From positions 20,646,001-20,710,000 of the forward strand of contig OZ365118.1 in assembly GCA_977030845.1 (NCBI GenBank): DNA of 64,000 bases, in the 5' to 3' direction. Source of the DNA: Fimbriosthenelais zetlandica. Taxonomy: Eukaryota. Below, one piece after another: positions 33,242-64,000 of this stretch (its first letter is position 1; every line of letters starts with the position of its first letter). Both the position numbers and the translations under genes were made by a program. Under the pieces are notes generated by a model. It saw only the letters and a program-made list of their open reading frames with translations, was not told the origin of the DNA and did not search any database.

Positions 33242-34882
33242 ATGTACAGTTACACCAAATACTCGCCCCCGGGGACACCCTCTCCCCCGTCCAGCCCCCG
33301 GTTTGACAGTATGACTCAGACTCAGACCCTGACATCAGGCAATCTGACGAACCGCCAACACTCCCATCAAAGTCAGAGGATGACCGCCAGCAGTAAAAGA
33401 TACAAGTACCTCCGACGCATCCTCAAATTCAGACAGATGGACTTTGAATATGCCTTTTGGCAGATGTTGTATTTATTCGTAGCCCCTCAGAAAGTGTAAG
33501 TTGATTAAAGTTTCCTGTATAATATGTAATGTAGAACTGAACTTTGAAGATTATTCTAAGATTCTTTCTTGGACTTTTTAATGAATTTCTTTAATTTCTC
33601 TCCTTACAGATACAGAAACTTTGCATATCGCAAACGTAAGTTCTTTTAGATAAAACTGTTCACAAAATTAATCCCAAAATAAGACCTATGAGATCAGAGT
33701 TGATCAGCTTCAGTAATTTCCCTAAATATCTCTTGGCATATATATGGTTTAAAGGAATAATTCTCAACCTAAATAATTTCAACAGAGGCCGAATCCCCAA
33801 AAGAATTATTTTTCTTTCCAGAGACAAAAGATCAATGGGCGCGGGATGATCCAGCTTTCTTGGTGCTTCTCAGCTTCTGGTTATGTGGTTAGTGATCATC
33901 AATATTGTTTTACCTTCACTTCATTTCATGACAATTCACTGGTCATTAAAACATAGAAATAAAATATTTACTATATGATCCTGTGGGGCATTTGTCATTC
34001 CATGTAAAAATATAACTTTGTAATTCCAGTATCCTCTATTGGGTTTGCCTTTGTGCTCGGGCTGTCCATCTTTGGCTTCATCAAGTTCCTGCTGTGGGTG
34101 ATATTTGTGGATTGTGTAGGAGTAGGTCTCCTTGTTGCCACTTGCTTCTGGTAAGTTTTTTCGTGAACACTCATCTATAGTTTCACAGCTGTTCCTCATT
34201 CAATAGTCCACTGTACAATTCCTAATTATGTTTCAGGTTTGTGTCTAATAAGTATCTCATCATGATGCCGCCTCACGGACAGGACGTGGAGTGGGGCTAC
34301 GCTTTTGATGTTCACCTCAACGCCTTCTTTCCACTTCTCATGATCCTCCACTTCTTCCAGCTGCCCATTCTAAATGGTAGGATATTTCACTAATCATACA
34401 ACAGTCTGCACCCACTTGTACTCATAAAAATCTTGTTAATAAATCGTGTTTTTTTTCAGCGGTTATAATCCAGGACTGGTTCGTATCCACCGTGCTGGGG
34501 AACACACTGTGGCTGTTCGCTATTGGTTACTACATATACATTACATTCCTGGGATATAGTGGTGAGTACAATATATATCAACCTATCACTTATAATCTAT
34601 TACCTTATAAAAAATTTACAGCAAAAAATAAGCCTGAAGGAAACGCTGACCATTCCTTCTAGTTCAGAAATTTCATTATTTTTTCAAGAGTTTAGTAAAC
34701 TTTTGTTCAATACAAAAAAATAATCTTAATATTTTCTTCCAACAGCCCTGCCTTTCTTAAAAAGGACGGAGGTACTTCTCTACCCAATGACTGGCATCTT
34801 CCTCTTCTACCTCCTCTCTATCGGACTCGGGTGGAACATGAGCAAAGCTCTCTGTTATTTCTACGAGTACAGAGTTCTCTAA
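33242..34882 (+). CDS. UNC50: Protein unc-50 homolog (UNC50/GMH1 family Golgi membrane protein), 281 aa, 7 coding exons
   Basis: Exons 33242-33495, 33610-33635, 33822-33887, 34030-34150, 34237-34376, 34460-34561 and 34746-34882 total 846 nt, all GT-AG and in frame. Family motifs: KRYKYLRRILKFRQMDFEYAFWQMLYLF, QTKDQWARDDPAFLVLL, DVEWGYAFDVHLNAFFP, GYYIYITFLGYSALPFLK. Confidence 0.97.
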
Positions 34883-36236: not shown

Positions 36237-39200
36237 CTAGTTTACATGGCATCTGAAGCAGAATGCCTTCCTGCATATCCCAGGCCCGGGACATGGGGAG
36301 GACGTCAGGGACGAATCATTAATGCTCTTCATCAACTTAACTTTAGGTGTGTACACCGAGGAAAAGTCTGAAACTTTGTGTTTAAGGGTCCTAGCAAAAG
36401 GTGATTTGGACCCTACATTTCCTAAACCATCACTAGGAAAGATGTTATTGTCTGAATCGTCGTCATCACTGCTGGAGACCACCTTTCTCTTTGCATGTTT
36501 TGTTAGGAGCATCTGCCTACCTCTAGACAGATTTATTCCCGGGTCCTTTTGGCAGCTCTTTAACTTTCTATGAGCATAAAGTTCAAAGTCAGAGCTCTGG
36601 GTATGGGTGGATGTTCCGTCCATACTAAGTGTTGCTCCACTGATATAAGCAGAATCTACACTCATACTTCTGCTCGGGCTATTTTTAAATATTTTCGCAT
36701 CAATGGATGTCGCCAATGTGGGAAATGTGCTCTTTTCTTGCTTAGTTTCCATGGGCATGACTTTGGCCGTTGGGATTTCGTTTCTGTTTTTAGAAAAAGA
36801 TTTCTGGATTGAAGTGAATGACTCGTTTTCACTGTATTCTTCTGATTCAGATTCTGAAGAATCTAAATCAGATTCTGAGTCGCTTTTCTCTCTAAATAAT
36901 TCCCTGCTTTTATCTGGAGGTGGGTTTTTCTTCTCGTATGCTGTTAGTCTGTTATTCTGTTCTGTTTTTCTCTCCGTTTCCTCTTCTATCTGATCATTAG
37001 ACTCATTTAAAAAGTCTATCCCGTCCAAGTCCTCTTCCCCCGCCTTCTTCGGTCCTCTCCCCTGTTTCTCAGTGCTGCCCTTGTTATCTAATGACCAAAG
37101 TTGACATTTCAAAGATTTCCTCCTCTCCTTTCCCTCGTCATTTTTGTTATTACTATCCTTTCTCTCCCTGTTCCCCAAACCAGATTGTCGTGTAGGTTTT
37201 TGGGTTACTGAGGCTTCTTTGGGCAAACTTTTAGGTTCTCTCAGAGATCCAAAGCAATTTTTCACTTTTAGTTTTTCCTTGGATGTCCTCAGTGACTGTT
37301 CCTTTCTTGCCAGAGCCAGTCTTCTCATGATCATTGAGTTGTCTTTGACATGGATGCTTCTTGGGGAGATACTTTTCCCATGATTCCCTGCTGAGAAATC
37401 CCCAGTGGAAAGTTTCAGTTTGGCAGGGACAGAGGAACAAGATCTATCTACTAACTCTATTCTCCCAAACCTTGGCGTCAGATTGGTGGCCGCGGCTTCT
37501 TTGCCCCTGGGAGTTGACTCCTTCCTCACTGACTGTAAGCCTTTCACTTCAGTTTGCCTGGCTGCCTTGTTTTTGGGTTCCACTTCCTTGATTTCCTTAT
37601 TTGGAGGGCATTTGTCCACTGAATATGAATCACTTGTCAAATGTGTATCAGAGTTTGAAATGTTGGTAATGCCTCTGGGCCTTAGTGACATTTCATCAAG
37701 ATGTTTTGAAATCAATGGTGTTTTAGGCGACTGTCCACTTAAACCACTTGTTCTGATTTTCAATTTTCTTGACGGATTTTGCAGAAGGTTTCTCGAGTCT
37801 CCCACTATAAAGGTTTCTTCTGTCACTGGGTTAACTTGCGTTTGTTTCAGCACATTCCCATTCCCTGCATTTACTTGAGGTTGAACCCTTGCCACTGGTA
37901 AATCTATGGTAAATTTCATGTTTTCCTCGGATATTTCTCTTAATGCCCGATTCTCTTCGTTGTTTTTAGCTGACTTAGGAACATTTTGTGACTTGGGAAC
38001 ATTTGTCAGTGATGTCTTGGCAGGTGCAGGCTGGGTACTCTGAATACAACTAATATCCAGGTCCATGTTCGTCCTGGCTCCAGGCTTGGTGGGCGTGCTG
38101 GCTGACATATGGTACTCATCTCTCTCAGGGCTGTTCTCTTTATCACATCTCTCCTTCTCCTTTTCAGGGGCTGAGCCTGGCACAGAGGGAGCTATACACA
38201 GCTTTGTCTCACCCGCTCTCTGACCCTCTCTCATCTTTTTCCATTCACTTGGGTTATTCTTATCATTTCGCAACTCATATTCTCGTTTCTCCCTTAAACC
38301 GACATCATTGGGCAATTCTTTAGGTTTTTTCGTTTCTTTCGCCGTCCTTTTCCATGGAGGAGGACTGTCACTTTTCCTTTTCCAATCCACCTGAGTTTCC
38401 ATAGGGTGACCGTTTCCATTGGGCATCATTTTGCAAGGTTGGCCATTGGTATTACCAGCTCTACTTGCAAGTTCGTTCCTCTTTCTTTCCCTTAATAATT
38501 TTGCCATGGGTGAAAGTCCTACTTCCGTCAACAAAGGTTGGTTATTATAATTCCACATTATCATTTTGTCATTCAGTTTCTTTTGAGTGTCAATGGCTGA
38601 AACAGGAATATGTTGAGATATGAAATCATGGGTTGCATGATAAGGGGAGGGGGACATTGGTCGGGGGTTCTTCGTGGGAGCATTGTGCTTTTCATGACAT
38701 GTTAAATCCCTTTTCCTACGTGCTTCAGCCATGGGAGAGTGAGGGAGTTTGAAGATTGGTTGGGAGGCGGCTTGTGCTCCTCTGTGGACATCGCCCCTGT
38801 TTTTATTTAATTCTCCATCCATCCGCTCTCCCAATTCTTTGTCTGATCCTACTTTTTTCTCATCTCTGGAAAGTCTGTTCTCTGTTATTTTTCTCAGAGA
38901 TCCCAAGCTGTTAGGTTTAGTTGGTACGCCCTGCCTTTGGGAATTGCTGGAAGTTTTCCCCGGTTCTCCGAGGGGTCGTAGACTGCCAAGTTTAAAGGGA
39001 GCATTGGTCGTGGAGGAGGAGGGTGTTTCTGCTTGTAGTACATGAGGTGGTGAGTTAGCTTGGAGGATCCGTGTGTGATTGAGGACAGGAGAAGGTTCTA
39101 CGTCATGATATGACATGGGTTCATGTACAGGCCGGATATCTCCCTTCTTCATGTACAGATCTCTATTCACTTCATGCCTCATGTCCCTCTGTTCCATCCT

Positions 39201-41950
39201 ACCAAAGTTCTCACCATCCAAAGCTTCCCTTTCCCCACGATCACAATTCCTCTTTTCCTCAAGATTCACTCTCCTTTTGCCATGCTCTAAATCCCATTTC
39301 TCTTCTTGGCCGACTTTATTCTTCTCACAGTCAAATTTCCTTCTTTTTTCAAACTCAAAATCTTTCTTTCTCGCCCAGTTCAGATCTGTTTTCTTCTCGT
39401 AGGTAAACTGTCTTCCCAATAGTTCCCGTTTCCTGGGATATGGCCCATCTGTGAGTTGGTTTCTGTCGTTCGGCTTCGGTGGAGTCTCCACTATTTCATG
39501 TACTCCGCTCTCAATGCTGAGTGCATCTTCTTCATCTGTGAAATCAGATTCAGAACTTACTAAATCTTCCTCCTCCTCTGTTTCCGATTCTTCCTCCTCT
39601 GAAAAATCATTTGATAGAAGATTCGATGTAAAATCTCTACGTCTTCCACTGACAGTCCTTGCCTGAGAATGTTCATTCCCTCTTGCCTGAAAATGTACAT
39701 TTTTCCCAGGCTGAGAATGTTCATTTTTTCCAGGCAAACCCTCGACATTCTCGCTCGGCTTGGGTTGTTCTTTTTTCCTTGGTAAAACCCAGTTATTACT
39801 GGCAAAGTGCTTGTCAGTGACACCTTCATCATCAGCTATGAGGGTGGTTTGTATTCTCCTGTGCCTTCTCTCTGACCTGCCATCTTGGTCCCCAACAGAT
39901 TTAGGTGACACCTTGAAATTAAATTTCTCCCGAGTGTCGATTAATTTATCCCTTACTGGACGTTCTGCCCTGGCACCCCAATTATCTAAATGAGCAGGTA
40001 TCCTTTGGTTGGGTGGTTTCAAGCTAGCTAGGGACAATTTTGTCAGTATGCCTTTTTCTGACAGCTCACGATCTTGCAAGTTCCTGGGCTTCACTGGAAA
40101 GCCGGTAGTATGTATGCCTTTGTAACCAGTAGGAGAACTAACTTGTGTTCGATTTGAAGTAACAAATGTGGCATGGTTGTGTGGGACGAGAGGGGAGGAT
40201 CGTGGAGAGGTATTATACTCCTCACCAGAGGTGTCGCTGGTACCACGGCTATCATCGTCCCACGCTTCCTCCCCCACGTACTCCTCACTCTCCTGCTCCT
40301 GCTCAGATGAAAACGTCAGAGTAGTTTCTGCAGCTTCCGAGTTAGAGGTGGTCACCTCATACACACACCCTCGACGAATAACTGAAATGAAGTTATATCC
40401 AGTTATAATTCATAGTTAGACGAAAATGGCACCAGTATCAATATATTAATAAATCCAAAATATTAAGTCACCGTGAAAGTTATACTGACTTTCATCATCA
40501 CACACGAAATATTTTTAGTATAAACATTTACTTGGGTTATTTGTTGGTCAGTAAATGTCGCATTGAATAAGGGTATATTGTACTTTTGTATATGGAACTA
40601 ATATATTTTAAAAAGGTCTGTGATTCCTTTAATTCTCACCTCCTTGGAAAGTCTTGTAACTCTTGACATCTGATTCTGAGTACATTTGACCATTGACGAT
40701 GTAGGTCTTATTGAACTTGGTGTCCACTGTCACGTCCTCCTCCTGCCAATAATAAATTGGTAGTCCACATTTTATCACTTTTATAATATATTCTAGCAAT
40801 TTCATGAATTTGGCTACGCGTCTAACGGTCTAACTACTTCCACCATTATAATAGAACGTGTATAAATAACCAAATTTGAATATTAGATTCGATTGTTAAG
40901 GGAGTTGATTCGAACCTCAACTCTTGCCACATCTCCACCATCCGGCTCTTCTTCTTTTAGGGCTTTCTGCCAAAATTTCTTCTCTGTAATACAAAAAAAA
41001 GTTAAGTCAGTCATTTTGTAAAAATAACTTCAAAAGTAGCGTTTAGATTAAAAAGACTAAAGTTACATCCCAATCTTGAAGAAAATTACATTTCTACGTT
41101 GATACTCTCACCTAGCTCTCTAAGACCATTTTTTAAACTAATTTTTCTAACTGCATTTAATTATTTAATTAATATTATTTTTTAATTATTGATAATTATA
41201 GAGGAGGGGTTCACTTACCATCTGGCAATGGAAGAGCTTCCTGCAAGGGGCAACGACCACATGGACGTTCGTCAGCAGATTCCAAATGGCCTGGAAAATT
41301 CAGCATTCATTATGATTTTGAACTTTAATATGAACTAGATCTATTTATTATTATGGTGGTTAGAGGGGAACATTCAGTATGTTCTGATGCAATATTTCGG
41401 TACCGTATCATAAGAAAGGAATGAATATTTTGAACAAAACGTAGATCTACACATAAATTACCGGTACTTAATAATAAAAATTAAATTATTGAAATATTCT
41501 TACCATTATCAACGACCACTACTAAATTTTCAAGGTCTACAACATCGGATTTCAAATTGGGGTTCGAGTACTGCAAATGAGAGAAAAATACGCTACATCA
41601 GTAAGCCAGTCACTCAGCTGGGATACATTAAAATCTCGGTAAGATTGCAATTTGTCTAGTTCAAACTTCCTATACTAGCCAGTATATGCAGCCTAGGCCC
41701 TACGCCTTGCTTGTTTTGAACTTGAACTTGTTAGCAGTTTGTTATTGTGTGGATAGCTAGAGTTCAGAATGGGCTAAGTACACACCTTCTCAATAATATG
41801 CCTCCATCTTCGAGCTAAAGTATCTGTAGACCTCTTCCGTGCTTCTATAAAGTTTTCAAACTCGTCAAGATCGAGATCTTCATCGCTAACCACCACAAAA
41901 TCCCCAGAATCTTCCCAGGACACATCCATGTTTGCCGCCATGGCGGCCAT
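36237..41950 (-). CDS. Scm3/HJURP-like CENP-A (CenH3) chaperone candidate, about 1539 aa, 6 coding exons: N-terminal Scm3-type domain, long disordered region, C-terminal Cys4 cluster
   Basis: Exons (-) 41950-41786, 41570-41504, 41290-41219, 40983-40916, 40742-40640 and 40381-36237 total 4620 nt, with consistent phases 0,1,1,0,1. Exons 1-3 give RKRSTDTLARRWRHIIEKY-SNPNLKSDVVDLENLVVVVDN-GHLESA. This matches the Scm3 signature W-x2-II-x-KY-x7-D-x-(V/I)DL-x6-(V/E)DNGH. The protein ends CPGPGICRKAFCFRCHVN*. Gene structure is well supported; family identity rests on motif recognition from memory. Confidence 0.8.
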
Positions 41951-45139: not shown

Positions 45140-46732
45140 TCAGCCCAGAGAGAGCAATCGGTCGTGCTGGTTTTGCTCTTTGTTGAGAATGTCAGAGAGA
45201 GCTGATAGGGCACTGTTGACAGAGAGGGGCACCCTCTTGCCCAGAGCCAGAAGGGGGTTGTCACGGCTTTCCCCTTGTCCTCCATGGACCATGTCAGACA
45301 GAACCTGAAGTGGCTGGTTCACTGATAATCCCCTTTTACCGAGCCTCAACAGTGGGTTGTTCACTGGTTTTCGTGAGCCTTTCAGGATGTCACTCAAAAT
45401 ACTCATGGGTTGGTTGACAGATAGTGGACCGCGCTTGCCCAGGGCTAGGAGAGGGTTATGCTGTTTCTGTGCACTATACATGCCAGATAAGACTTCTAAA
45501 GGTTGATTGACAGAAAGGGGCGCCCGCTTGCCCAGGGCTAGGAGAGGGTTATGCTGTTTCTGGGCACCACCATACATGCCAGATAATACTTCTAAAGGTT
45601 GATTGATAGAAAGGGGCGCCCGCTTGCCCAGGGCTAGGAGAGGGTTATGCTGTTTGTGGGCAGAATACATGCCGGATAATACTTCTAAAGGTTGATTGAC
45701 AGAAAGGGGCGCCCGCTTGCCCAGGGCTAGGAGAGGGTTATGCTGTTTGTGGGCAGAATACATGCCGGATAAGACTTCTAAAGGTTGATTGACAGAAAGG
45801 GGCGCCCGCTTGCCCAGGGCTAGGAGAGGGTTATGCTGTTTGTGGGCAGAATACATGCCGGATAAGACTTCTAAAGGTTGATTGACAGAAAGGGGCGCCC
45901 GCTTGCCCAGGGCTAGGAGAGGGTTATGCTGTTTCTGTGCACCATACATGCCAGATAACACTTCTAATGGTTGATTGATTGACAAGGGTGCTCGCTTAGA
46001 ATATTCACTATCTTCGTCGTCGAGTGGGTTGGCAGAACGCTTTCCCAGTCGTTGGAGAGGATCCGGGGGAGAGGCTCGTCTCCTCTGGACCATATCAGAG
46101 AGAACACTCAAAGGTTGTGTTACGGACAACCTACCTCGTTTACCCAGAGCTAATAACCTGTTTCTAGCTTGATTATGACCTGAGTTATACATGTCAGAGA
46201 GAACATCGAGGGCACTGTTAACGGACAGTGATGCTCTTTTCATCATTTCATCATGTTCATCGTCATTGTCATATCTTTTCCCTAGGGCTAAGAGCGGGTT
46301 TTTCTGGCCTTTAGTACTATACATGTCAGAGAGTAGATTTAATGGCTGGTTGATAGACAGAGATGCTCTCTTTTCCTCACTTTCCTCATAATCACGCTTG
46401 CCTAATGCCAAGAGAGGGTTCCGAGCTTCAGATTTATCGCCGTAGAAATCAGACAGAACAGACAAGGGCTGATTGACTGAGAGGGAAGCTCTTTTATCTT
46501 CGTCGTAGTCCTTCCTCTGTCGTGGATTCTGTTGGTTGTCTTCAGGTTGCCGTTTGCCGAGCGCTAACAGAGGGTTGTGCTGATCTTTCTGGTGGTGGAC
46601 CATGTCTGTGAGCACGCTGATTGGCTGGTTGACGGAGAGGGGCGCCCTCTTGTCACCGTCATGTGACCAGCAGGCACGGAAGGTGAAGGAAGAGAAGATG
46701 AAGGAGGCCAGCAGCAGGGGCACAGTGGACAT
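45140..46732 (-). CDS. DH44/egg-laying hormone/CRF-family neuropeptide precursor, 530 aa, single coding exon, 14 predicted amidated peptides
   Basis: Signal peptide MSTVPLLLASFIFSSFTFRACWS, then 14 units of consensus xxLS(V/I)NQPLxVLS(D/G)M...NPLLALG. Each is flanked by KR, and the last ends G-stop. Acidic spacers occur in the N-terminal half. The S(I/V)NxxLxxLxDM...LL-amide pattern is that of the ELH/DH44/CRF family. Acceptor ttacag| lies 17 nt upstream of the ATG (exon starts 46749); minus-strand AATAAA at 44762-44767. Confidence 0.9.
   Translation of the reverse strand: MSTVPLLLASFIFSSFTFRACWSHDGDKRAPLSVNQPISVLTDMVHHQKDQHNPLLALGKRQPEDNQQNPRQRKDYDEDKRASLSVNQPLSVLSDFYGDKSEARNPLLALGKRDYEESEEKRASLSINQPLNLLSDMYSTKGQKNPLLALGKRYDNDDEHDEMMKRASLSVNSALDVLSDMYNSGHNQARNRLLALGKRGRLSVTQPLSVLSDMVQRRRASPPDPLQRLGKRSANPLDDEDSEYSKRAPLSINQPLEVLSGMYGAQKQHNPLLALGKRAPLSVNQPLEVLSGMYSAHKQHNPLLALGKRAPLSVNQPLEVLSGMYSAHKQHNPLLALGKRAPLSVNQPLEVLSGMYSAHKQHNPLLALGKRAPLSINQPLEVLSGMYGGAQKQHNPLLALGKRAPLSVNQPLEVLSGMYSAQKQHNPLLALGKRGPLSVNQPMSILSDILKGSRKPVNNPLLRLGKRGLSVNQPLQVLSDMVHGGQGESRDNPLLALGKRVPLSVNSALSALSDILNKEQNQHDRLLSLG
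45433..45995 (-). repeat. Coding tandem array of six near-identical 93-bp units (one is 96 bp) encoding peptides 6-11 of the precursor
   Basis: The anchor cgcttgcccagggctaggagagggttatgctgttt recurs at 45433, 45526, 45622, 45715, 45808 and 45901. Confidence 0.95.
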
Positions 46733-57000: not shown

Positions 57001-60000
57001 TCAGACGATTTTGTTGAGGTTCTTGCTAGCTCTGAGAGCATCAAGGAATTCGCCAACTGTGTCTTTCCTGAACAAGTCCCAGTTGACTTCTATCTGTAGG
57101 TTGTGCTGGAGCGTCTCTTCTGATGGGAAGGGGCGAACCTGGCGGGGGAAAATGAACTTAACTAACTATTTTTGGCCCATGCATGCCAATATAACAATAT
57201 CAATTACAGCAACTTAAATAGTCATAGGACATGAGAACAGCCTTATCACAGATTAACATATTAACTTACCTTTTCTCTGATATGTTTTTTCGTTTCTTCA
57301 GTGGCATATCTCTCAACTAAGCGTCTTGACAACATTATCAATTCACAACCATTGCTAACCTAGAAATATATTTAATAAAATATCAATTATTAAGGTATTA
57401 ATTTAACAAGGTGTCAATGAAAGTATTTAAAAAAAGCATTTGATTGATAAAATCAGGAGGAATCACTTACCAAGGTGACAGACGTTGTGGGTGTGTCATG
57501 ACTGTAGGCTTTATCATCAGAAAACTTGATCATCTCCAAGCCCTGAACATTTTAAAATTATTGAAAAATTAATTAAATCAATTAATTAAAATAAATATAG
57601 AATGAATTCTTGATATAAAGTGCAATGATATTCTCATGTGTCTAAATGAACTTAGTACCCTGATAACACAAGTATAGGCCTATTTAATTAATGAATTAAT
57701 TAAAAATTACGAAAGCATCTCTGGGCCGTAGGATCCTTAGTTGGACGAAGCAGGTAGGGACAGTGCTGTGGGAGGGCGCCTGTGTCTTAGCTGACTTGGT
57801 GGAGCGGCCTTCTATGGTCATGGCCTCAGCCAGAGTAATATTGTCATCTTCCTGACCAAAATCCTCCCATGAAGACGGCATACCAGGCGTCTGTACAAAT
57901 AATCATTACATGTCATTATGTAACCAACATCTCAATCATCTCTAGCAATCCTAAAGGAAATGTCCATCAATTTCCATACTTTTCTTTTCTGATGGGTCAT
58001 GGAAGGATAAATATTTTGCATGATGCGGTAGGTGGGCATATAGTTAGTATAAAGGTACCTTACTTACAGAATAATTTTCCTTTATCTCAGGTAGGAAAAA
58101 GAGTTTGCTTTTTGAATACCCGGCTTCTTTCCCCATCTTTTCCTGCACATGTGGAGACTTGGCAGGAGCTGGAGCTGATTTAGGAGTTTTTTTCTTCCTT
58201 TTATAACTTTCTCTCGACACTTCCACCACCTCACCCCCCGTCAGGGTGACTATTTGAGGGGCACTGCATGTGTCCGGAAGCTCAAAACGCGTGACGCGAG
58301 CACGTGATACAGTGACGTCATCACATTTGGGAAGCGTCTCAGTTTGAGCTTCAGCCAGGACAGGGCTGGCCTCTGGTTCTTCGAAATCCTACAAACGAAC
58401 AAGCAATGAACCAAATGTGATATTGTTTCAATACAACCTCTTTTCTTTGCATGGATGAAAAATGAATTTTCATGCAATTTAAAACTATTAAAACAGATTT
58501 AAGATAACTCACATCAGAGGCATATGATGAGAGGTCATCGTCAGAATGCTGATACTGATTACAAATGTCGTCTCTTGAGCATCTCGTACGGAGACGTGTG
58601 TCAATCCTGGGCTCTGAAATACACAGCAACATGTCAATATAGGCCTATGTTCTGTGTGTAGAATATATAGCATAATGTGACAACACTATTGAATCTTGGA
58701 ACGTAATATAACAAGTATATATAGTCTTATAGACCATACTTGGCTCAGCGGTGCCCTCTCTCGGTATTTTCACTCGTAAATCCAGCTTCCTCTCACTCCA
58801 GGGTCGTGTTGGACTGACAGCATCCAACTTTTTGAGAACCTTGCATGAACCCTTAACAGAGAATAAAAGTTAATTACGATTAATTATATTCACTTTAAAT
58901 GTGATGAATAACGTCTTTTACTGATGTATAACATATCTATAAATAGATTAAATATAAAAACATGATAACTTACAGATCGCACGATGTAGATCCAATCGTT
59001 TTCCTTACTGTCAGAAACTACTACTGCCCCAGGCCTGTCAGATACAAACAAAAATACTTTATAATTAAGCTATAAACGAAAGCTCCTCTTTATACCATGT
59101 TGAATCCCCAAGGTTAAAGATAATTAAAGGTTAATATGTGTAAAGTTACCTGAAGTAGTGAATGACCAAGGTTAAAGATGATTAACGGTTAATATGTGTA
59201 AAGTTACCTGAAGTAGTGAATCACCAAGGTTAAAGATAATTAAAGGTTAATATGTGTAAAGTTACCTGAAGTAGTGAATCACCAATGTTAAAGATAATTA
59301 AAGGTTAATGTGTAAAGTTACCTGAAGTAGTGAATCACCAAGTTTAAAGATAATTAATGGTTAATATGTGTAAAGTTACCTGAAGTAGTGGAAGAGACAA
59401 GTCCCTGGAATCTCCATAAAGTGCTGCACGGGGAAGCCCTGGAGGAAGGGCACGTGGTGGCGGCAGAAACTAATGTGGTCTGGATCCTTACCATCCGGGG
59501 TGTTAAAAAAGATCCGCTGAAAGTCCGCCCGAGTGATGATGAGGATGTCCATGTGGCTGGCACTCTCCACAGTGGCTGTACGTACGGTGTGGTGTAACAA
59601 GGCCACCTCCTACAAGACGTGTGTAAAAAGAAGTTTATAAAGTGTAAGAAGGTGGGGTTCTACGTTAAAGTTAATAGCCTAACCATTCCCAGCTATGAAA
59701 GAAACCATTCGGGCGATCCAAAATTGACTCAGTGAAGATTGTTACCAAAGTGGAATTCATACCAAAAGATTATAGGCAAAGATAAAGAAACATATATATT
59801 ATATCTTACCCCGAAACTTTGGCCATTTTGCATCCTGGCTACAGCACGCATGACGAGGTTGCCAGTAATACTGTCCTTTGATAGTTGCTTTACTATGGCT
59901 GCAAAAATAAATAATCTTTATTTTAGAGTTCCTCTTACTCAGCTGTATGCCGAGTTTCAGACAAGCATTTTTGAACTGTACAGAATAACGGGCTTAAATA

Positions 60001-62995
60001 AAGACTGCCCATTACTGATCTATAATATAAAGACTGCCCATTACTGATCTATAAGGTAAATCGCACAGACCTGAGCCCCGGATGATGAAGTAGAAATTCT
60101 CAGCATAATGTCCTTGTTTCAAGATGACTCTTTTGGCTGGCACCCTGATAAAAGATAATAAGTAATGAAATATCCAACAAGCGAGTTTTCAATGTCAATA
60201 TCAGAAAAATATGTTTTAAAGAATAAGCCTAAATGTGTATGGTAGAAGAAAAATAAGACTCACTCTTGGAACCAGGCCACCCTGGCAAACTTTTGCTGCA
60301 TGTGTAGAGGGTAGTCAGAAAAGGAATTCAAATTCTGCAGCACAGTCAGCACCTGAGTACAACAGAAACATTGTGTTACTTTTTGTCATTATTTGCTCCC
60401 GAGGCTGTTTCAGATTCGTCTGATTTGTCTTTTGGATGTCATAACTTACCTTCTGTATCATTTCAGGTGTACGTCCTCGCGAGGGCGTGGTGAGAATGGT
60501 CTTATGTTCATCGCTCAGACGAATCTGTATGAGCAAATGAAAGAATCTGAATATATATTTTTTGGTACATCCTTAATTTTTACTGAAGTGCATCACATAA
60601 AACATTATAAATGTAATGACTAAACAAGTAGCGACCTGACCACTTTTATGTTACTGTATTGCTTATACAAGTTACTATAGTCACTATTAGTCAATCAATA
60701 GTGGGGTTACCTCTTTGTTGGCACTAAATTGACTAGGGTCAAACGTAAGACCTTTCCTCTTCTGGATCTCCAGCTGGTAAGCGTAGTCCTCCAGCTCTCT
60801 CGCCAAGTCCAGGAAACTCTTTAATGTTTGCTCTGTGGTGTCCTGCTTCCTGAACAATAATTAAATACCTCATTATATATAATACGAGTGTTTATATATA
60901 CAGTCTGGTATTGCATACCTCGTACAATGTACAAATAGGTATTGAAATAGGCAAGCCATGAATAGGTCACTTGAATAGGTAATAGAGAGCCATTCAGGCT
61001 TCCTTCAAGATCTTATCAAAAGCATAATGCGTAATAACATTCACATCTATATTTACTACATAATGGATCCTGCTAATGGCACTGAACCCATGACCCCTCA
61101 ACTAGCCTGCTTTTGTCATGGGTAATGCTAATTCACCAACTCAATAATTTATAGGGTATTATCAATTTCCTACATAGATAAATACAAATGGAAGTGAGTG
61201 ATAATATGAAATTAACTTATTTACATACTTTGAAAGACTTTTGAACCAGCAGAGAATGAGATAGACCTTTCTGCCCGACCTTCTGAACAGGTTAAAGGCC
61301 TGAAAAAAGAGACAATAATTTAATAAATGAAATAAATTTATATAGATCTTAAAATCATTGACATTCACTTTAATTCAAACCAGGAAATCTGTGTAAAGAT
61401 TTGATTTGTGCAAGATTTTACAATCCAGAATCTCGTAGTGGTCTACTATTCTAGTATACAGTATTTTAGAATTAATATATTTAGCAAGATCTCCTTATGG
61501 TCTTAGCGTGGAGTCATGATAGGAACACCCGGGGATCAAGAAATAAGCAGTTAAAACATCAAATCAGATTAAAAGGATTGATACCATAAAACATAGCGCC
61601 AACTATGGTGAACTGGCAGAGAACTATAAACATTGCATAGCACAAGCAGGCAATATTGGCAAAGGATCGACAAAAGTAGTTTAGAAGTCAAAGGCACAAT
61701 CAAATGATATGAAACATTTGACTAAGAAACTTGGAGGTTTGACAGGATCTTAGTGTGACTCAGGACTGGTCACAATTAAAGCAATATAACCATTTAATCT
61801 TCTCCTTCCGTATATATGTATATATTGCCTTTTCAGTACTACGATCCGGTGAATTGATCCTCTAGGGTAAATGAAATTGGAAAGCATATATGGACAGTAG
61901 GTCTATCCTCTAAGCCCAACCCTCCCCCAGCAAACACCATAATAAATATCTGAAATTTTAAAAAACAACAGCTAAACTGAAGATACTAACCTGACCAGGC
62001 TTGGTGAATCGAGACCGTTGAGAGTCGAGTGTCTGGGTGGAGGCTGAGGGCGTGACACTTCTTCGTAGAGATGAGTGTCGACCACCAGGATCAGGAGTGG
62101 TACTCCTCTTACCCAATGATATCTTACGCTGTGTTGTTTTGTGCCTCACCTGCGGATCGGTAGCACCTCCTGATTCACCAGGCACAAGAGATAGTGAACT
62201 AATCGATCTTGTTTTTCCCTCAGTTTGACTGGTTTTCCTTTGCTTAGTCTGGTCAGTTTTCTGGTATGATTTTTGTTTTCTCCGGGAACTAATTACGACC
62301 TGTCCATCCTCACCCAATCCCACATTATCCACACATTCAATTTTTACTTTAATTATGGGAGTAGAGTGAATTAAAGTCTTTTGGCGCCCACTACGGGCAT
62401 CTCTCTCCCTTCTCAGAGAATCATGGCTCTTGGAATAGTCCAGGGCCTTAAAACCCCCAAAATGTGGTAAACCTTTTTGAGGCCCCTCCCCTCTAACTTC
62501 TTTTAACTTCACATGACCTCGAGTCGTCAATGAAGAGGGCGGAAGTGACGTCATGTCACTGTCTCGAAGCGTCATGCTGGGCATGCTGGTAGAGGGGAAC
62601 CCTTTCTGTCTTTTAAACCTTACATCCATGGCGGTCCTTTTGTTAGATATCTTCAAATTGGGGAACTTCCGACCCAGCAAAGACACTTCACGATTATTTC
62701 CAAGTCTCTCTGGGCAGGAGACGGAAGTGAGTGCAAATTTGAATCCTCTAGATGGTGTCAAAGTGTCAACGACCTTCAACCTTCTGACGTCATTGTCATA
62801 CGTGACGTGGTAGACGTCATTAAGACGCGCCATTTTGAGGTCGTTTTCATGTTTTTGTAACCTGGGTAGAGCGTCCCTGGAGTTGAATCTCCTGGTGATT
62901 GTTTTTCCAAGCACGTGATGAAGTCGGTTCTCACGACTTGTTGAACCGACATTGTGTGGCAGGTCCAGCCGTAAACTCAGATCTAGAGCACTCAT
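57001..62995 (-). CDS. CNBD2: Cyclic nucleotide-binding domain-containing protein 2-like, about 948 aa, 16 coding exons (N-terminus uncertain)
   Basis: Exons (-) 62995-61991, 61299-61229, 60849-60711, 60524-60450, 60352-60264, 60144-60071, 59898-59810, 59609-59380, 59034-58974, 58851-58740, 58613-58513, 58388-58068, 57890-57711, 57542-57471, 57359-57270 and 57138-57001 total 2847 nt in frame. Motifs: KRVILKQGHYAENFYFII, phosphate-binding cassette GQSFGEVALLHHTVRTATV, WIYIVRSGSCKVL, LVSNGCELIML, PFPSEETLQHNLQIEVNWDLFRK. These match the CNBD2 layout as recalled. Confidence 0.85.
59108..59390. repeat. Minisatellite of about five 58-bp units, each containing a copy of the CNBD2 exon-8 end and its 5' splice site
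   Basis: Unit ccaaggttaaagataattaaaggttaatatgtgtaaagttacctgaagtagtgaatca starts at about 59108, 59166, 59224, 59282 and 59338. On the minus strand each unit contains cactacttcag|gtaact. Confidence 0.95.
59998..60054. repeat. 29-bp-period tandem duplication in a CNBD2 intron
   Basis: ataaagactgcccattactgatctataa occurs twice (59998 and 60027). Confidence 0.9.
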
Positions 62996-64000
62996 CTTCA
63001 CTGGTAGATGAAGAATGACTGTTAAATCCTCTACTTCACATATGTATGGCTATATAGGCCTTAATTCCGTTACATTTAACGTCTTTCCTTCTCTCCATTT
63101 AGCTATAGGTCTAGGTTAATATCTCCAAGTGTGAGGAAGGCAAAATATCGTCAAATGGCAGATATGTATGTGGCATAGGCCTATTATGGACTGCCCACTA
63201 AATAATACAAATTCCCTTAGAAATACAATAACAGTCATAGCCTACACAAAATATGTCCTATTTTCCAATAGTGAGGTAGACCTATGTGAGTAGGCGCAGC
63301 CTGTTCTTCTTCATTGACTTGGACTCAGCCAATGAACCATACCGGTTTTCCACTGAAAAAGGGCGTCCTTTCCTCCTTCAAGATATCCCTCACAATGCAC
63401 AGAATAGTTACACATTCTTATAATCCAAAATGATACCACTGCTTTAGCAGATGCAAATCCGTTGAACATTTAGGAATACTCCATGCATGGTAAAGATCTC
63501 CTTCCATATAAGTGTTAAAAAGTGATTATCAGGTACATGTACAAAGGTGCTTGTACAGTGAATGGCTGGCTAGTCGCTAACAACTAAACGTATATCAAAG
63601 GTAGGCCTATGGGATAAGTAGGCCAGTGTGATCGCCTGCCCATTTTCACAGCTAAACCTTGGCTCACCTGGTAAGTCCTTGCTTGATCAGGGGAAGGCTA
63701 GACATTATATACAGCTGAGGTATGGTCAGGCTTTTCTTAGCCTAACTTTTGAGTAATATATCGACGCGCGCACATTTTGTTGAAGTTCTGCAAAAATATT
63801 CACTCAAATAACACCAAAAATCTTTGAATATAACTTATATTAGAAATGATGTCATTTATAAGTGCCCTCCCAGCCATAAGTAATAGTCAGTCCTTGAATG
63901 CCAATGGGACCCAATGTTATGCGGGGATCCACGCTCCAAGTGGTCATCTTAAGATCTTACAACTTTAAAAGATGATTGCTCATTTGTCGTGATTACATAT

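What the first reader, a model, noticed from the sequence alone, without database searches (positions are those of the whole stretch)
36237..36293. C-terminal four-cysteine cluster (C-x5-C-x4-C-x2-C) closing the Scm3-like protein
Seen: after about 1400 low-complexity residues the protein ends CPGPGICRKAFCFRCHVN*. Recalled knowledge: large fungal Scm3 proteins (up to about 1300 aa) carry variable C-terminal extensions, including a cysteine-rich metal-chelating cluster, which human HJURP lacks. Inference: the layout N-terminal Scm3 domain + long linker + terminal Cys4 may be ancestral to fungi and animals. It would be a second, independent line of support for orthology and a candidate centromere-targeting module.
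Basis: partly seen in the sequence, partly recalled or inferred. Interest (0 to 1): 0.7.

Follow-up and report, generated by a model that had tools for sequence, protein, structure and literature searches.

The report
Cysteine-rich tail of a worm HJURP
The animal's centromere-histone chaperone gene (HJURP/Scm3) really does end in four closely spaced cysteines that could hold a zinc ion, but I found no relative of this tail, so its link to the known fungal cysteine-rich domain is untested.

Summary
The 4.1-kb minus-strand terminal exon (36237-40381) ends ...SSPCPGPGICRKAFCFRCHVN*, that is C-x5-C-x4-C-x2-C-H, followed by TAG at 36237-36239. A six-exon model gives one open 1539-aa frame. Exons 1 and 2 hit Pfam Scm3 colinearly (14.1 + 13.4 bits), so the gene is an HJURP/Scm3 orthologue. 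The cluster is unlikely by chance: p about 3e-5 from this protein's composition, about 2e-3 for random DNA. The other two frames are closed. A convergent UNC-50 gene 1.4 kb downstream leaves no room for further exons.

The interpretation could not be tested. These searches found no relative of the tail or the exon:
- Pfam and PDB sequence searches
- three word-indexed searches of 5.8 billion proteins
- one exhaustive phmmer search of 1.84 billion representatives, last 200 aa
- two metagenome scans
- the animal's own genome

No sequencing run was listed. No fungal Scm3 sequence could be fetched for alignment. AlphaFold gives only a low-confidence beta-hairpin.

My best reading is a lineage-restricted mini zinc knuckle that serves as a C-terminal anchoring module, by analogy with the fungal Scm3 CYS domain. 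Common ancestry with that domain remains speculation.

The parts
36240..36293 (-). C-terminal 18 residues CPGPGICRKAFCFRCHVN. Cys codons are at 36291-93, 36273-75, 36258-60 and 36249-51, with His at 36246-48. This is a candidate Zn(Cys)4 or Cys3His mini-knuckle, and the last four residues C-H-V-N also outline a CaaX-like box.
   Evidence: AlphaFold2 single-sequence model places two short strands (ICR / FCF) as a hairpin, pLDDT about 57-61
36237..36239 (-). Stop codon TAG.
36237..40381 (-). Terminal exon 6 (4145 nt), about 1380 codons of disordered, S/K/E/R-rich sequence ending in the Cys cluster. The acceptor is ...TTCATTTCAG.
   Evidence: no Pfam family
40640..40743 (-). Exon 5 (inferred; the boundary may shift by 1 nt together with exon 4).
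   Evidence: splice-site reading and an intact spliced frame
40917..40983 (-). Exon 4 (inferred; the donor GTTCGA is weak, and this is the least certain exon).
41219..41290 (-). Exon 3, encoding GHLESADERPCGRCPLQEALPLPD, which contains a CxxC.
41504..41570 (-). Exon 2, encoding YSNPNLKSDVVDLENLVVVVDN, the second half of the Scm3 domain including the Y of the KY motif.
   Evidence: Pfam PF10384 positions 23-45, 13.4 bits
41786..41950 (-). Exon 1 with the start ATG, encoding the first half of the Scm3 domain (...RRWRHIIEK).
   Evidence: Pfam PF10384 positions 2-22, 14.1 bits
35859..35864 (-). Only poly(A)-signal-like hexamer (ATTAAA) within 540 nt downstream of the stop.
   Evidence: function not shown

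Best explanation
The 18-residue tail is the true C-terminus of this (probably annelid) animal's HJURP/Scm3 CENP-A chaperone. Its four cysteines, possibly with the adjacent histidine, most likely chelate one zinc ion and form a very small knuckle or hairpin at the end of about 1350 disordered residues. By analogy with the C-terminal targeting modules of other Scm3/HJURP proteins, this knuckle would serve as an anchoring surface that helps bring the N-terminal CENP-A/H4-binding Scm3 domain to centromeres. The anchor could be DNA, a Mis18-complex or CENP-C-type receptor, or a second HJURP molecule. Shown here: the sequence, the gene model, the Scm3 domain, the non-random Cys density, and the terminal position. 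Inferred: zinc binding, folding, and any role in targeting. Its origin is best treated as lineage-restricted, because homology with the fungal CYS domain is not demonstrated.
For: The tail and spacing are confirmed. The six-exon model gives a single open 1539-aa frame. Exons 1 and 2 each have Scm3 (PF10384) as their only Pfam hit, on adjacent profile positions 2-22 and 23-45 (14.1 + 13.4 bits against a 24.3-bit cut-off). Four Cys in the last 18 residues has p about 3e-5 from the protein's own composition and about 2e-3 from random DNA. Composition switches in the tail, from 20% to 44% hydrophobic and from 4.5% to 11% aromatic residues, with basic residues interleaved (R, K, R, H), as is typical of nucleic-acid-binding knuckles. 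AlphaFold2 places a beta-hairpin exactly on ICR/FCF, with Cys on both strands. A convergent UNC-50 gene ends 1.37 kb downstream, so this exon is terminal. Other frames are closed. There is a precedent: fungal Scm3 carries a cysteine-rich domain needed for centromere targeting (title cited; zinc binding is from my own memory of the abstract).
Against: There is no conservation evidence at all, because no orthologue or paralogue of the tail was found. No Pfam or PDB sequence match was found for the tail. The AlphaFold confidence is low (mean pLDDT 56). Only one CxxC pair is present, and the 4- and 5-residue spacers are unusual for classical zinc fingers. No RNA evidence shows that the tail is in the mature mRNA. 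HJURP is a fast-evolving protein whose ends may drift neutrally.
Confidence: 0.4

Rival explanations
1. The tail is a neutral, fortuitous ending. The last residues before the stop of a rapidly evolving disordered protein happen to be Cys-rich and have no specific function.
For: No homologue of the tail was found anywhere. [quoted passage not shown] Under a random-DNA model p is about 2e-3, so dozens of such tails are expected genome-wide. The structure model has low confidence.
Against: Given this protein's own composition the cluster has p about 3e-5. The clear switch to hydrophobic, aromatic and basic residues in exactly these 18 positions looks like a structured element. The coincidence with the known C-terminal Cys-rich domain of fungal orthologues also argues against pure chance.
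Confidence: 0.3
2. The tail is a true homologue of the fungal Scm3 CYS domain. The architecture Scm3 domain + linker + terminal zinc-binding Cys cluster would then be ancestral to fungi and animals and lost in vertebrates, insects and nematodes.
For: It sits on the same protein family, at the C-terminal end, and shares the same residue type. The fungal CYS domain is implicated in centromere targeting (title cited).
Against: The exhaustive phmmer search with the last 200 aa gave no hit at E <= 0.001 in 1.84 billion representatives, which presumably include fungal Scm3. The metazoan survey reports no such motif and little homology outside scm3. It would require many independent losses. A 15-residue four-Cys motif arises easily by convergence. 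No alignment could be made because no fungal sequence was obtainable.
Confidence: 0.1
3. The tail is a lipidation signal. The last four residues C-H-V-N act as a CaaX-type prenylation box, as in the farnesylated kinetochore proteins CENP-E, CENP-F and Spindly and the histone chaperone Nap1. The upstream cysteines would be accessory, for example acylation sites.
For: The sequence shows Cys exactly at -4 and Val at the a2 position. Multiple Cys just upstream of a CaaX box is a known layout in Ras/Rho proteins (my own knowledge). An earlier scan note reports a CKVQ box on this genome's CENP-F (untested).
Against: X = Asn is not a canonical farnesyl- or geranylgeranyl-transferase specificity residue (my own knowledge). 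Membrane anchoring makes little sense for a CENP-A chaperone. No conservation data are available.
Confidence: 0.08
4. The tail is a gene-model artefact. The mature mRNA does not contain it, because of an unrecognised intron or an earlier polyadenylation site inside the 4.1-kb exon.
For: No RNA run was listed for this locus. Exons 4 and 5 are inferred only from splice-site reading.
Against: A 1375-codon uninterrupted frame runs straight into the tail, while the other frames are closed. The convergent UNC-50 gene leaves no room for alternative downstream coding exons.
Confidence: 0.07

Closest known systems
Cysteine-rich (CYS) domain of fungal Scm3 (Schizosaccharomyces pombe and filamentous fungi; Aravind et al. 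2007, Folco et al. 2024)
   Same: It occurs in the same protein family (Scm3/HJURP), lies C-terminal to the CENP-A-binding domain, and is cysteine-rich. In fission yeast it is required for centromere targeting.
   Different: No alignment could be made here. The annelid element is only 15-18 residues with four Cys and one His, at the extreme end of a 1539-aa protein. No significant sequence similarity was found to anything in 1.84 billion proteins. Zinc binding and function are untested.
C-terminal recruitment modules of animal HJURPs: human HCTD/R1-R2 repeats (Mis18 binding, dimerisation), Drosophila CAL1 C-terminal CENP-C-binding domain, conserved C-terminal motif of Caenorhabditis NEFR-1
   Same: The architecture is the same: an N-terminal scm3 domain, a long divergent linker and a short conserved C-terminal element thought to recruit the chaperone to centromeres.
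   Different: Those modules are not cysteine clusters, and none matches this tail. Here conservation across species has not been shown.
CCHC zinc knuckle (C-x2-C-x4-H-x4-C, retroviral nucleocapsid type)
   Same: It has a similar size (14-15 residues) and four ligands, with aromatic and basic residues between them. It holds a single zinc ion and often binds nucleic acid.
   Different: The order and spacing differ (C-x5-C-x4-C-x2-C, roughly the reverse). There is no Pfam hit even at E <= 10.
CaaX boxes of farnesylated kinetochore and chromatin proteins (CENP-E CKTQ, CENP-F CKVQ, Spindly CPQQ, Nap1)
   Same: There is a Cys four residues from the C-terminus with an aliphatic a2 residue, on a centromere-related protein.
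   Different: The terminal Asn is non-canonical. Three further Cys lie immediately upstream, which suits metal binding better.

Membership tests
Scm3/HJURP CENP-A chaperones | N-terminal Scm3 domain (Pfam PF10384) with the KY motif followed by alternating acidic and short hydrophobic residues | tested here: met
   Exon 1 matches profile positions 2-22 (14.1 bits) and exon 2 matches positions 23-45 (13.4 bits). Each has Scm3 as its only Pfam hit, and they are colinear across the splice junction (...IIEK|YSNPNLKSDVVDLENLVVVVDN). The sum of 27.5 bits exceeds the 24.3-bit cut-off, though each piece alone is below it. A six-frame genome search misses the domain because an intron splits it.
Scm3/HJURP CENP-A chaperones | Selective binding of CENP-A/H4 and centromere localisation | not testable with these tools
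   This needs biochemistry or cytology.
Fungal Scm3 CYS domain | Sequence alignable to the conserved Cys/His pattern of the fungal CYS domain | not testable with these tools
   No fungal Scm3 sequence could be obtained, and the papers describing the motif are not held. Pfam has no hit on the tail. The exhaustive phmmer search with the last 200 aa returned 0 proteins, which is a weak negative because the motif is short.
Fungal Scm3 CYS domain | Binds zinc; Cys mutations abolish centromere targeting | not testable with these tools
   Experimental.
Fungal Scm3 CYS domain | Conserved among orthologues of the clade | tested here: inconclusive
   No orthologue of this gene's C-terminal exon was retrievable from any other species.
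CCHC zinc knuckle (PF00098) and other catalogued zinc fingers | Match to the family profile or spacing C-x2-C-x4-H-x4-C | tested here: not met
   There was no Pfam family at E <= 10 on the last 60 or 200 aa and no PDB chain at E <= 10 on the last 50 aa. The observed spacing is C-x5-C-x4-C-x2-C.
CaaX prenylation motif | Cys at -4, aliphatic a2, and X from the set S/M/Q/A/C (farnesyl) or L/F (geranylgeranyl) | tested here: inconclusive
   The tail ends C-H-V-N. Cys at -4 and Val at a2 are met, but X = Asn is outside the canonical set.

The most novel reading that the evidence does not exclude
An animal HJURP retains, or has convergently evolved, a terminal zinc-binding cysteine module equivalent to the fungal Scm3 CYS domain. 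That would be the first animal example. It would suggest that a metal-stabilised C-terminal centromere anchor belongs to the ancestral opisthokont toolkit for CENP-A deposition and was later replaced by Mis18- or CENP-C-binding modules in vertebrates and flies.
Probability: 0.1. Interest if true: 0.6.

Novelty: new variant of a known kind. Interest (0 to 1): 0.27.

Why it matters
How HJURP/Scm3 chaperones find centromeres differs strikingly between lineages: Mis18 binding in vertebrates, CENP-C binding in flies, and Mis16-BD plus a zinc-binding CYS domain in fission yeast. The recently found invertebrate orthologues have no known targeting module. A conserved terminal zinc knuckle in annelid HJURP would give a concrete, mutable handle for that question and might connect animal and fungal mechanisms. 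At present it is one 18-residue tail in one genome with no comparative or expression support, so it is a lead and not a result.

Tried and rejected
- Pfam found nothing on the whole exon or on the last 60 and 200 aa at E <= 10.
- A PDB sequence search with the last 50 aa found nothing at E <= 10.
- Three searches with the search for homologous proteins all returned no hits: region 1150-1375, region 1-1375 and region 1316-1375 (only 3 word-sharing candidates). Only proteins of 756-2406 aa were candidates.
- The exhaustive phmmer search with the last 200 aa against 1.84 billion representatives gave 0 hits at E <= 0.001.
- The ESM Atlas search by features on residues 1290-1375 gave a best score of 0.78 to a RAD51AP1 cluster. 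That is below the level reached by shuffled sequences a third of the time, so I rejected it.
- The own genome has no paralogue of the tail. The one weak hit (E 4.1, L002) lacks the Cys pattern and is noise. The tail DNA is single-copy.
- A metagenome scan with the exon found nothing.
- A metagenome scan for DNA encoding CRKAFCFRC found one contig (L004). The match lies antisense to a 366-aa ORF and not at a protein end, so it is a chance hit at the expected rate of about one.
- For sequencing runs, none was listed for RNA or any other kind (one search failed as busy). As a result read laying was not used, and expression, splicing and polymorphism are all unknown.
- The AlphaFold2 single-sequence model of the last 100 aa has mean pLDDT 56 and only a short hairpin on the Cys cluster. 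It is too weak for a fold search, so I ran none.
- The papers giving the fungal motif (Folco 2024, Aravind 2007) are not held. Other papers only cite them. No held paper reports a Cys cluster in an animal HJURP.
- I did not search with the spliced N-terminal Scm3 domain to collect orthologues.
- I did not run complex prediction, because I make no specific binding claim.

Full report
**What is there**

On the minus strand a 1375-codon open frame runs from 40364 to a TAG at 36237-36239. Its last residues are SSPCPGPGICRKAFCFRCHVN*. Cys codons lie at 36291-93, 36273-75, 36258-60 and 36249-51, and a His codon at 36246-48. The spacing is C-x5-C-x4-C-x2-C(-H), and the coordinates in the finding are exact.

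**The gene**

- Reading the minus strand upstream shows five small exons with GT-AG borders: 41786-41950, 41504-41570, 41219-41290, about 40917-40983 and about 40640-40743.
- Joined to the large exon from its acceptor at 40381, they give one uninterrupted 1539-codon frame. Exons 4 and 5 are the least certain.
- Exon 1 alone hits Pfam Scm3 (PF10384) on profile positions 2-22 (14.1 bits). Exon 2 alone hits positions 23-45 (13.4 bits). Each has Scm3 as its only Pfam hit, and the two are colinear across the junction ...RHIIEK|YSNPNLKSDVVDLENLVVVVDN.
- The summed score exceeds the 24.3-bit cut-off, and the KY motif followed by acidic and short hydrophobic residues is present.
- A six-frame search with the family finds nothing because an intron splits the domain.
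- Other scan notes call the genome probably annelid. I did not test that.

**Is the tail the real end of the protein?**

- The other two minus-strand frames are full of stops around the tail, so a frameshift artefact is unlikely.
- On the plus strand a UNC-50 family gene has six exon matches from 33407 to 34864. It converges on the HJURP gene.
- Only about 1.37 kb separates the two last coding exons, so there is no room for further HJURP coding exons downstream.
- No sequencing run, RNA or DNA, was listed for this locus. Splicing, polyadenylation and expression therefore remain unverified.

**Is it more than chance?**

- The model protein has 19 Cys in 1539 residues.
- Random placement gives four Cys within 15 residues somewhere in 0.8% of trials, and four or more in the last 18 residues in 3e-5 of trials.
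- With the Cys-codon frequency of random DNA of this composition, the latter is 2.1e-3.
- The tail also switches composition compared with the rest of the exon: 44% hydrophobic against 20%, and 11% aromatic against 4.5%, with R, K, R and H interleaved.
- For a pre-specified gene this is unusual. Genome-wide, some such tails are expected by chance, and the feature was picked after reading.

**What is it related to?**

Nothing I could find:
- Pfam has no hit on the exon or on the last 60 or 200 aa, even at E <= 10.
- The PDB sequence search is blank.
- Three word-indexed searches of 5.8 billion proteins returned nothing. They covered the C-terminal 226 aa, the whole exon and the last 60 aa.
- An exhaustive phmmer search with the last 200 aa against 1.84 billion representatives returned zero proteins at E <= 0.001, not even the protein itself.
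- The ESM Atlas look-alike scored 0.78, which is noise level.
- The animal's own genome holds no paralogue and no second copy of the DNA.
- Metagenome scans gave nothing except one chance match antisense to an unrelated ORF.

The species and its close relatives are evidently absent from these protein collections, and the exon diverges too fast for remote detection. This fits the 2026 survey of metazoan HJURPs. [quoted passage not shown] Consequently the key test, conservation of the tail in orthologues, could not be done.

**The fungal comparison**

A cysteine-rich domain in fungal Scm3 that ensures centromere targeting is established in the literature. Folco et al. 2024 is cited. That it binds zinc is from my memory of the abstract, and the 2026 paper lists it among DNA-binding references. 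Neither that paper nor Aravind et al. 2007 is held, and no fungal Scm3 sequence could be fetched. I could not align the tail with the fungal motif. The blank exhaustive search is a weak negative, because 15 residues cannot reach significance against 1.8 billion proteins. No held paper reports a Cys cluster in an animal HJURP.

**Structure**

A single-sequence AlphaFold2 model of the last 100 residues is poor (mean pLDDT 56). It places two three-residue strands on ICR and FCF, forming a hairpin with Cys on both strands and at both ends, with pLDDT about 57-61. That is compatible with a small zinc knuckle but is not evidence for one. The spacing resembles a reversed CCHC knuckle in size. It matches no catalogued family.

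**Most likely mechanism (confidence about 0.4)**

The tail is a lineage-restricted mini zinc knuckle at the end of a long disordered linker. It would act as an anchoring surface for DNA, a centromere receptor or a second HJURP molecule. That parallels the C-terminal targeting modules of fungal Scm3 (CYS), fly CAL1, worm NEFR-1 and human HJURP. The sequence facts are shown. Metal binding and function are inferred.

**Rivals**

- A neutral, fortuitous ending: 0.3.
- A CaaX-like prenylation signal. The end C-H-V-N has Cys at -4 and Val at a2, but a non-canonical Asn: 0.08.
- A gene-model artefact: 0.07.

**Verdict**

The tail is not, at present, an independent line of support for orthology. The Scm3 domain already carries that. 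Interest is modest. The decisive step is simple: collect HJURP orthologues from other annelids and spiralians, via the Scm3 domain or UNC-50 synteny, and look at how they end.

Noticed in passing
window 33407-34864 (+): A UNC-50 family gene has six exon matches to PF05216 covering profile positions 1-220. It is convergent with the HJURP-like gene, and about 1.37 kb separates the last coding exons. It could serve as a synteny anchor for finding the fast-evolving HJURP in related genomes.
   Followed up: partly
window 41219-41290 (-): Exon 3 of the HJURP-like gene encodes a CxxC (ERPCGRCPLQ) directly after the Scm3 domain. It is the only other closely spaced Cys pair in the protein. Whether it cooperates with the C-terminal cluster is unknown.
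   Followed up: no
window 36240-36251 (-): The last four residues C-H-V-N have the outline of a CaaX prenylation box (Cys at -4, Val at a2), but the terminal Asn is non-canonical.
   Followed up: partly
window 45140-46732 (-): A 530-aa ORF consists of many repeats ending ...NPLLALGKR, that is dibasic cleavage plus an amidation signal, so it looks like a multi-copy neuropeptide precursor. It was already noted by the scan (s1-217106). Its Pfam hits (TPP_enzyme_N, YebO) have no passing stretch and look spurious.
   Followed up: no
window 59379-59606 and 60015-60143 (-): Two short ORFs give weak hits to the cyclic-nucleotide-binding domain (PF00027, profile positions 54-87 and 5-27). They are probably exons of a cNMP-binding protein gene on the minus strand.
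   Followed up: no
window 61958-63001 (-): A 347-aa basic, Ser/Thr-rich ORF has no convincing Pfam family. It may be a large exon of the neighbouring gene.
   Followed up: no
L004 1964-1990 (-), metagenome contig ERZ1740072 NODE-18397: This is the only exact match to DNA encoding CRKAFCFRC in the metagenome collection. It lies antisense to a 366-aa ORF and is internal to its own frame, so it is a chance match.
   Followed up: yes
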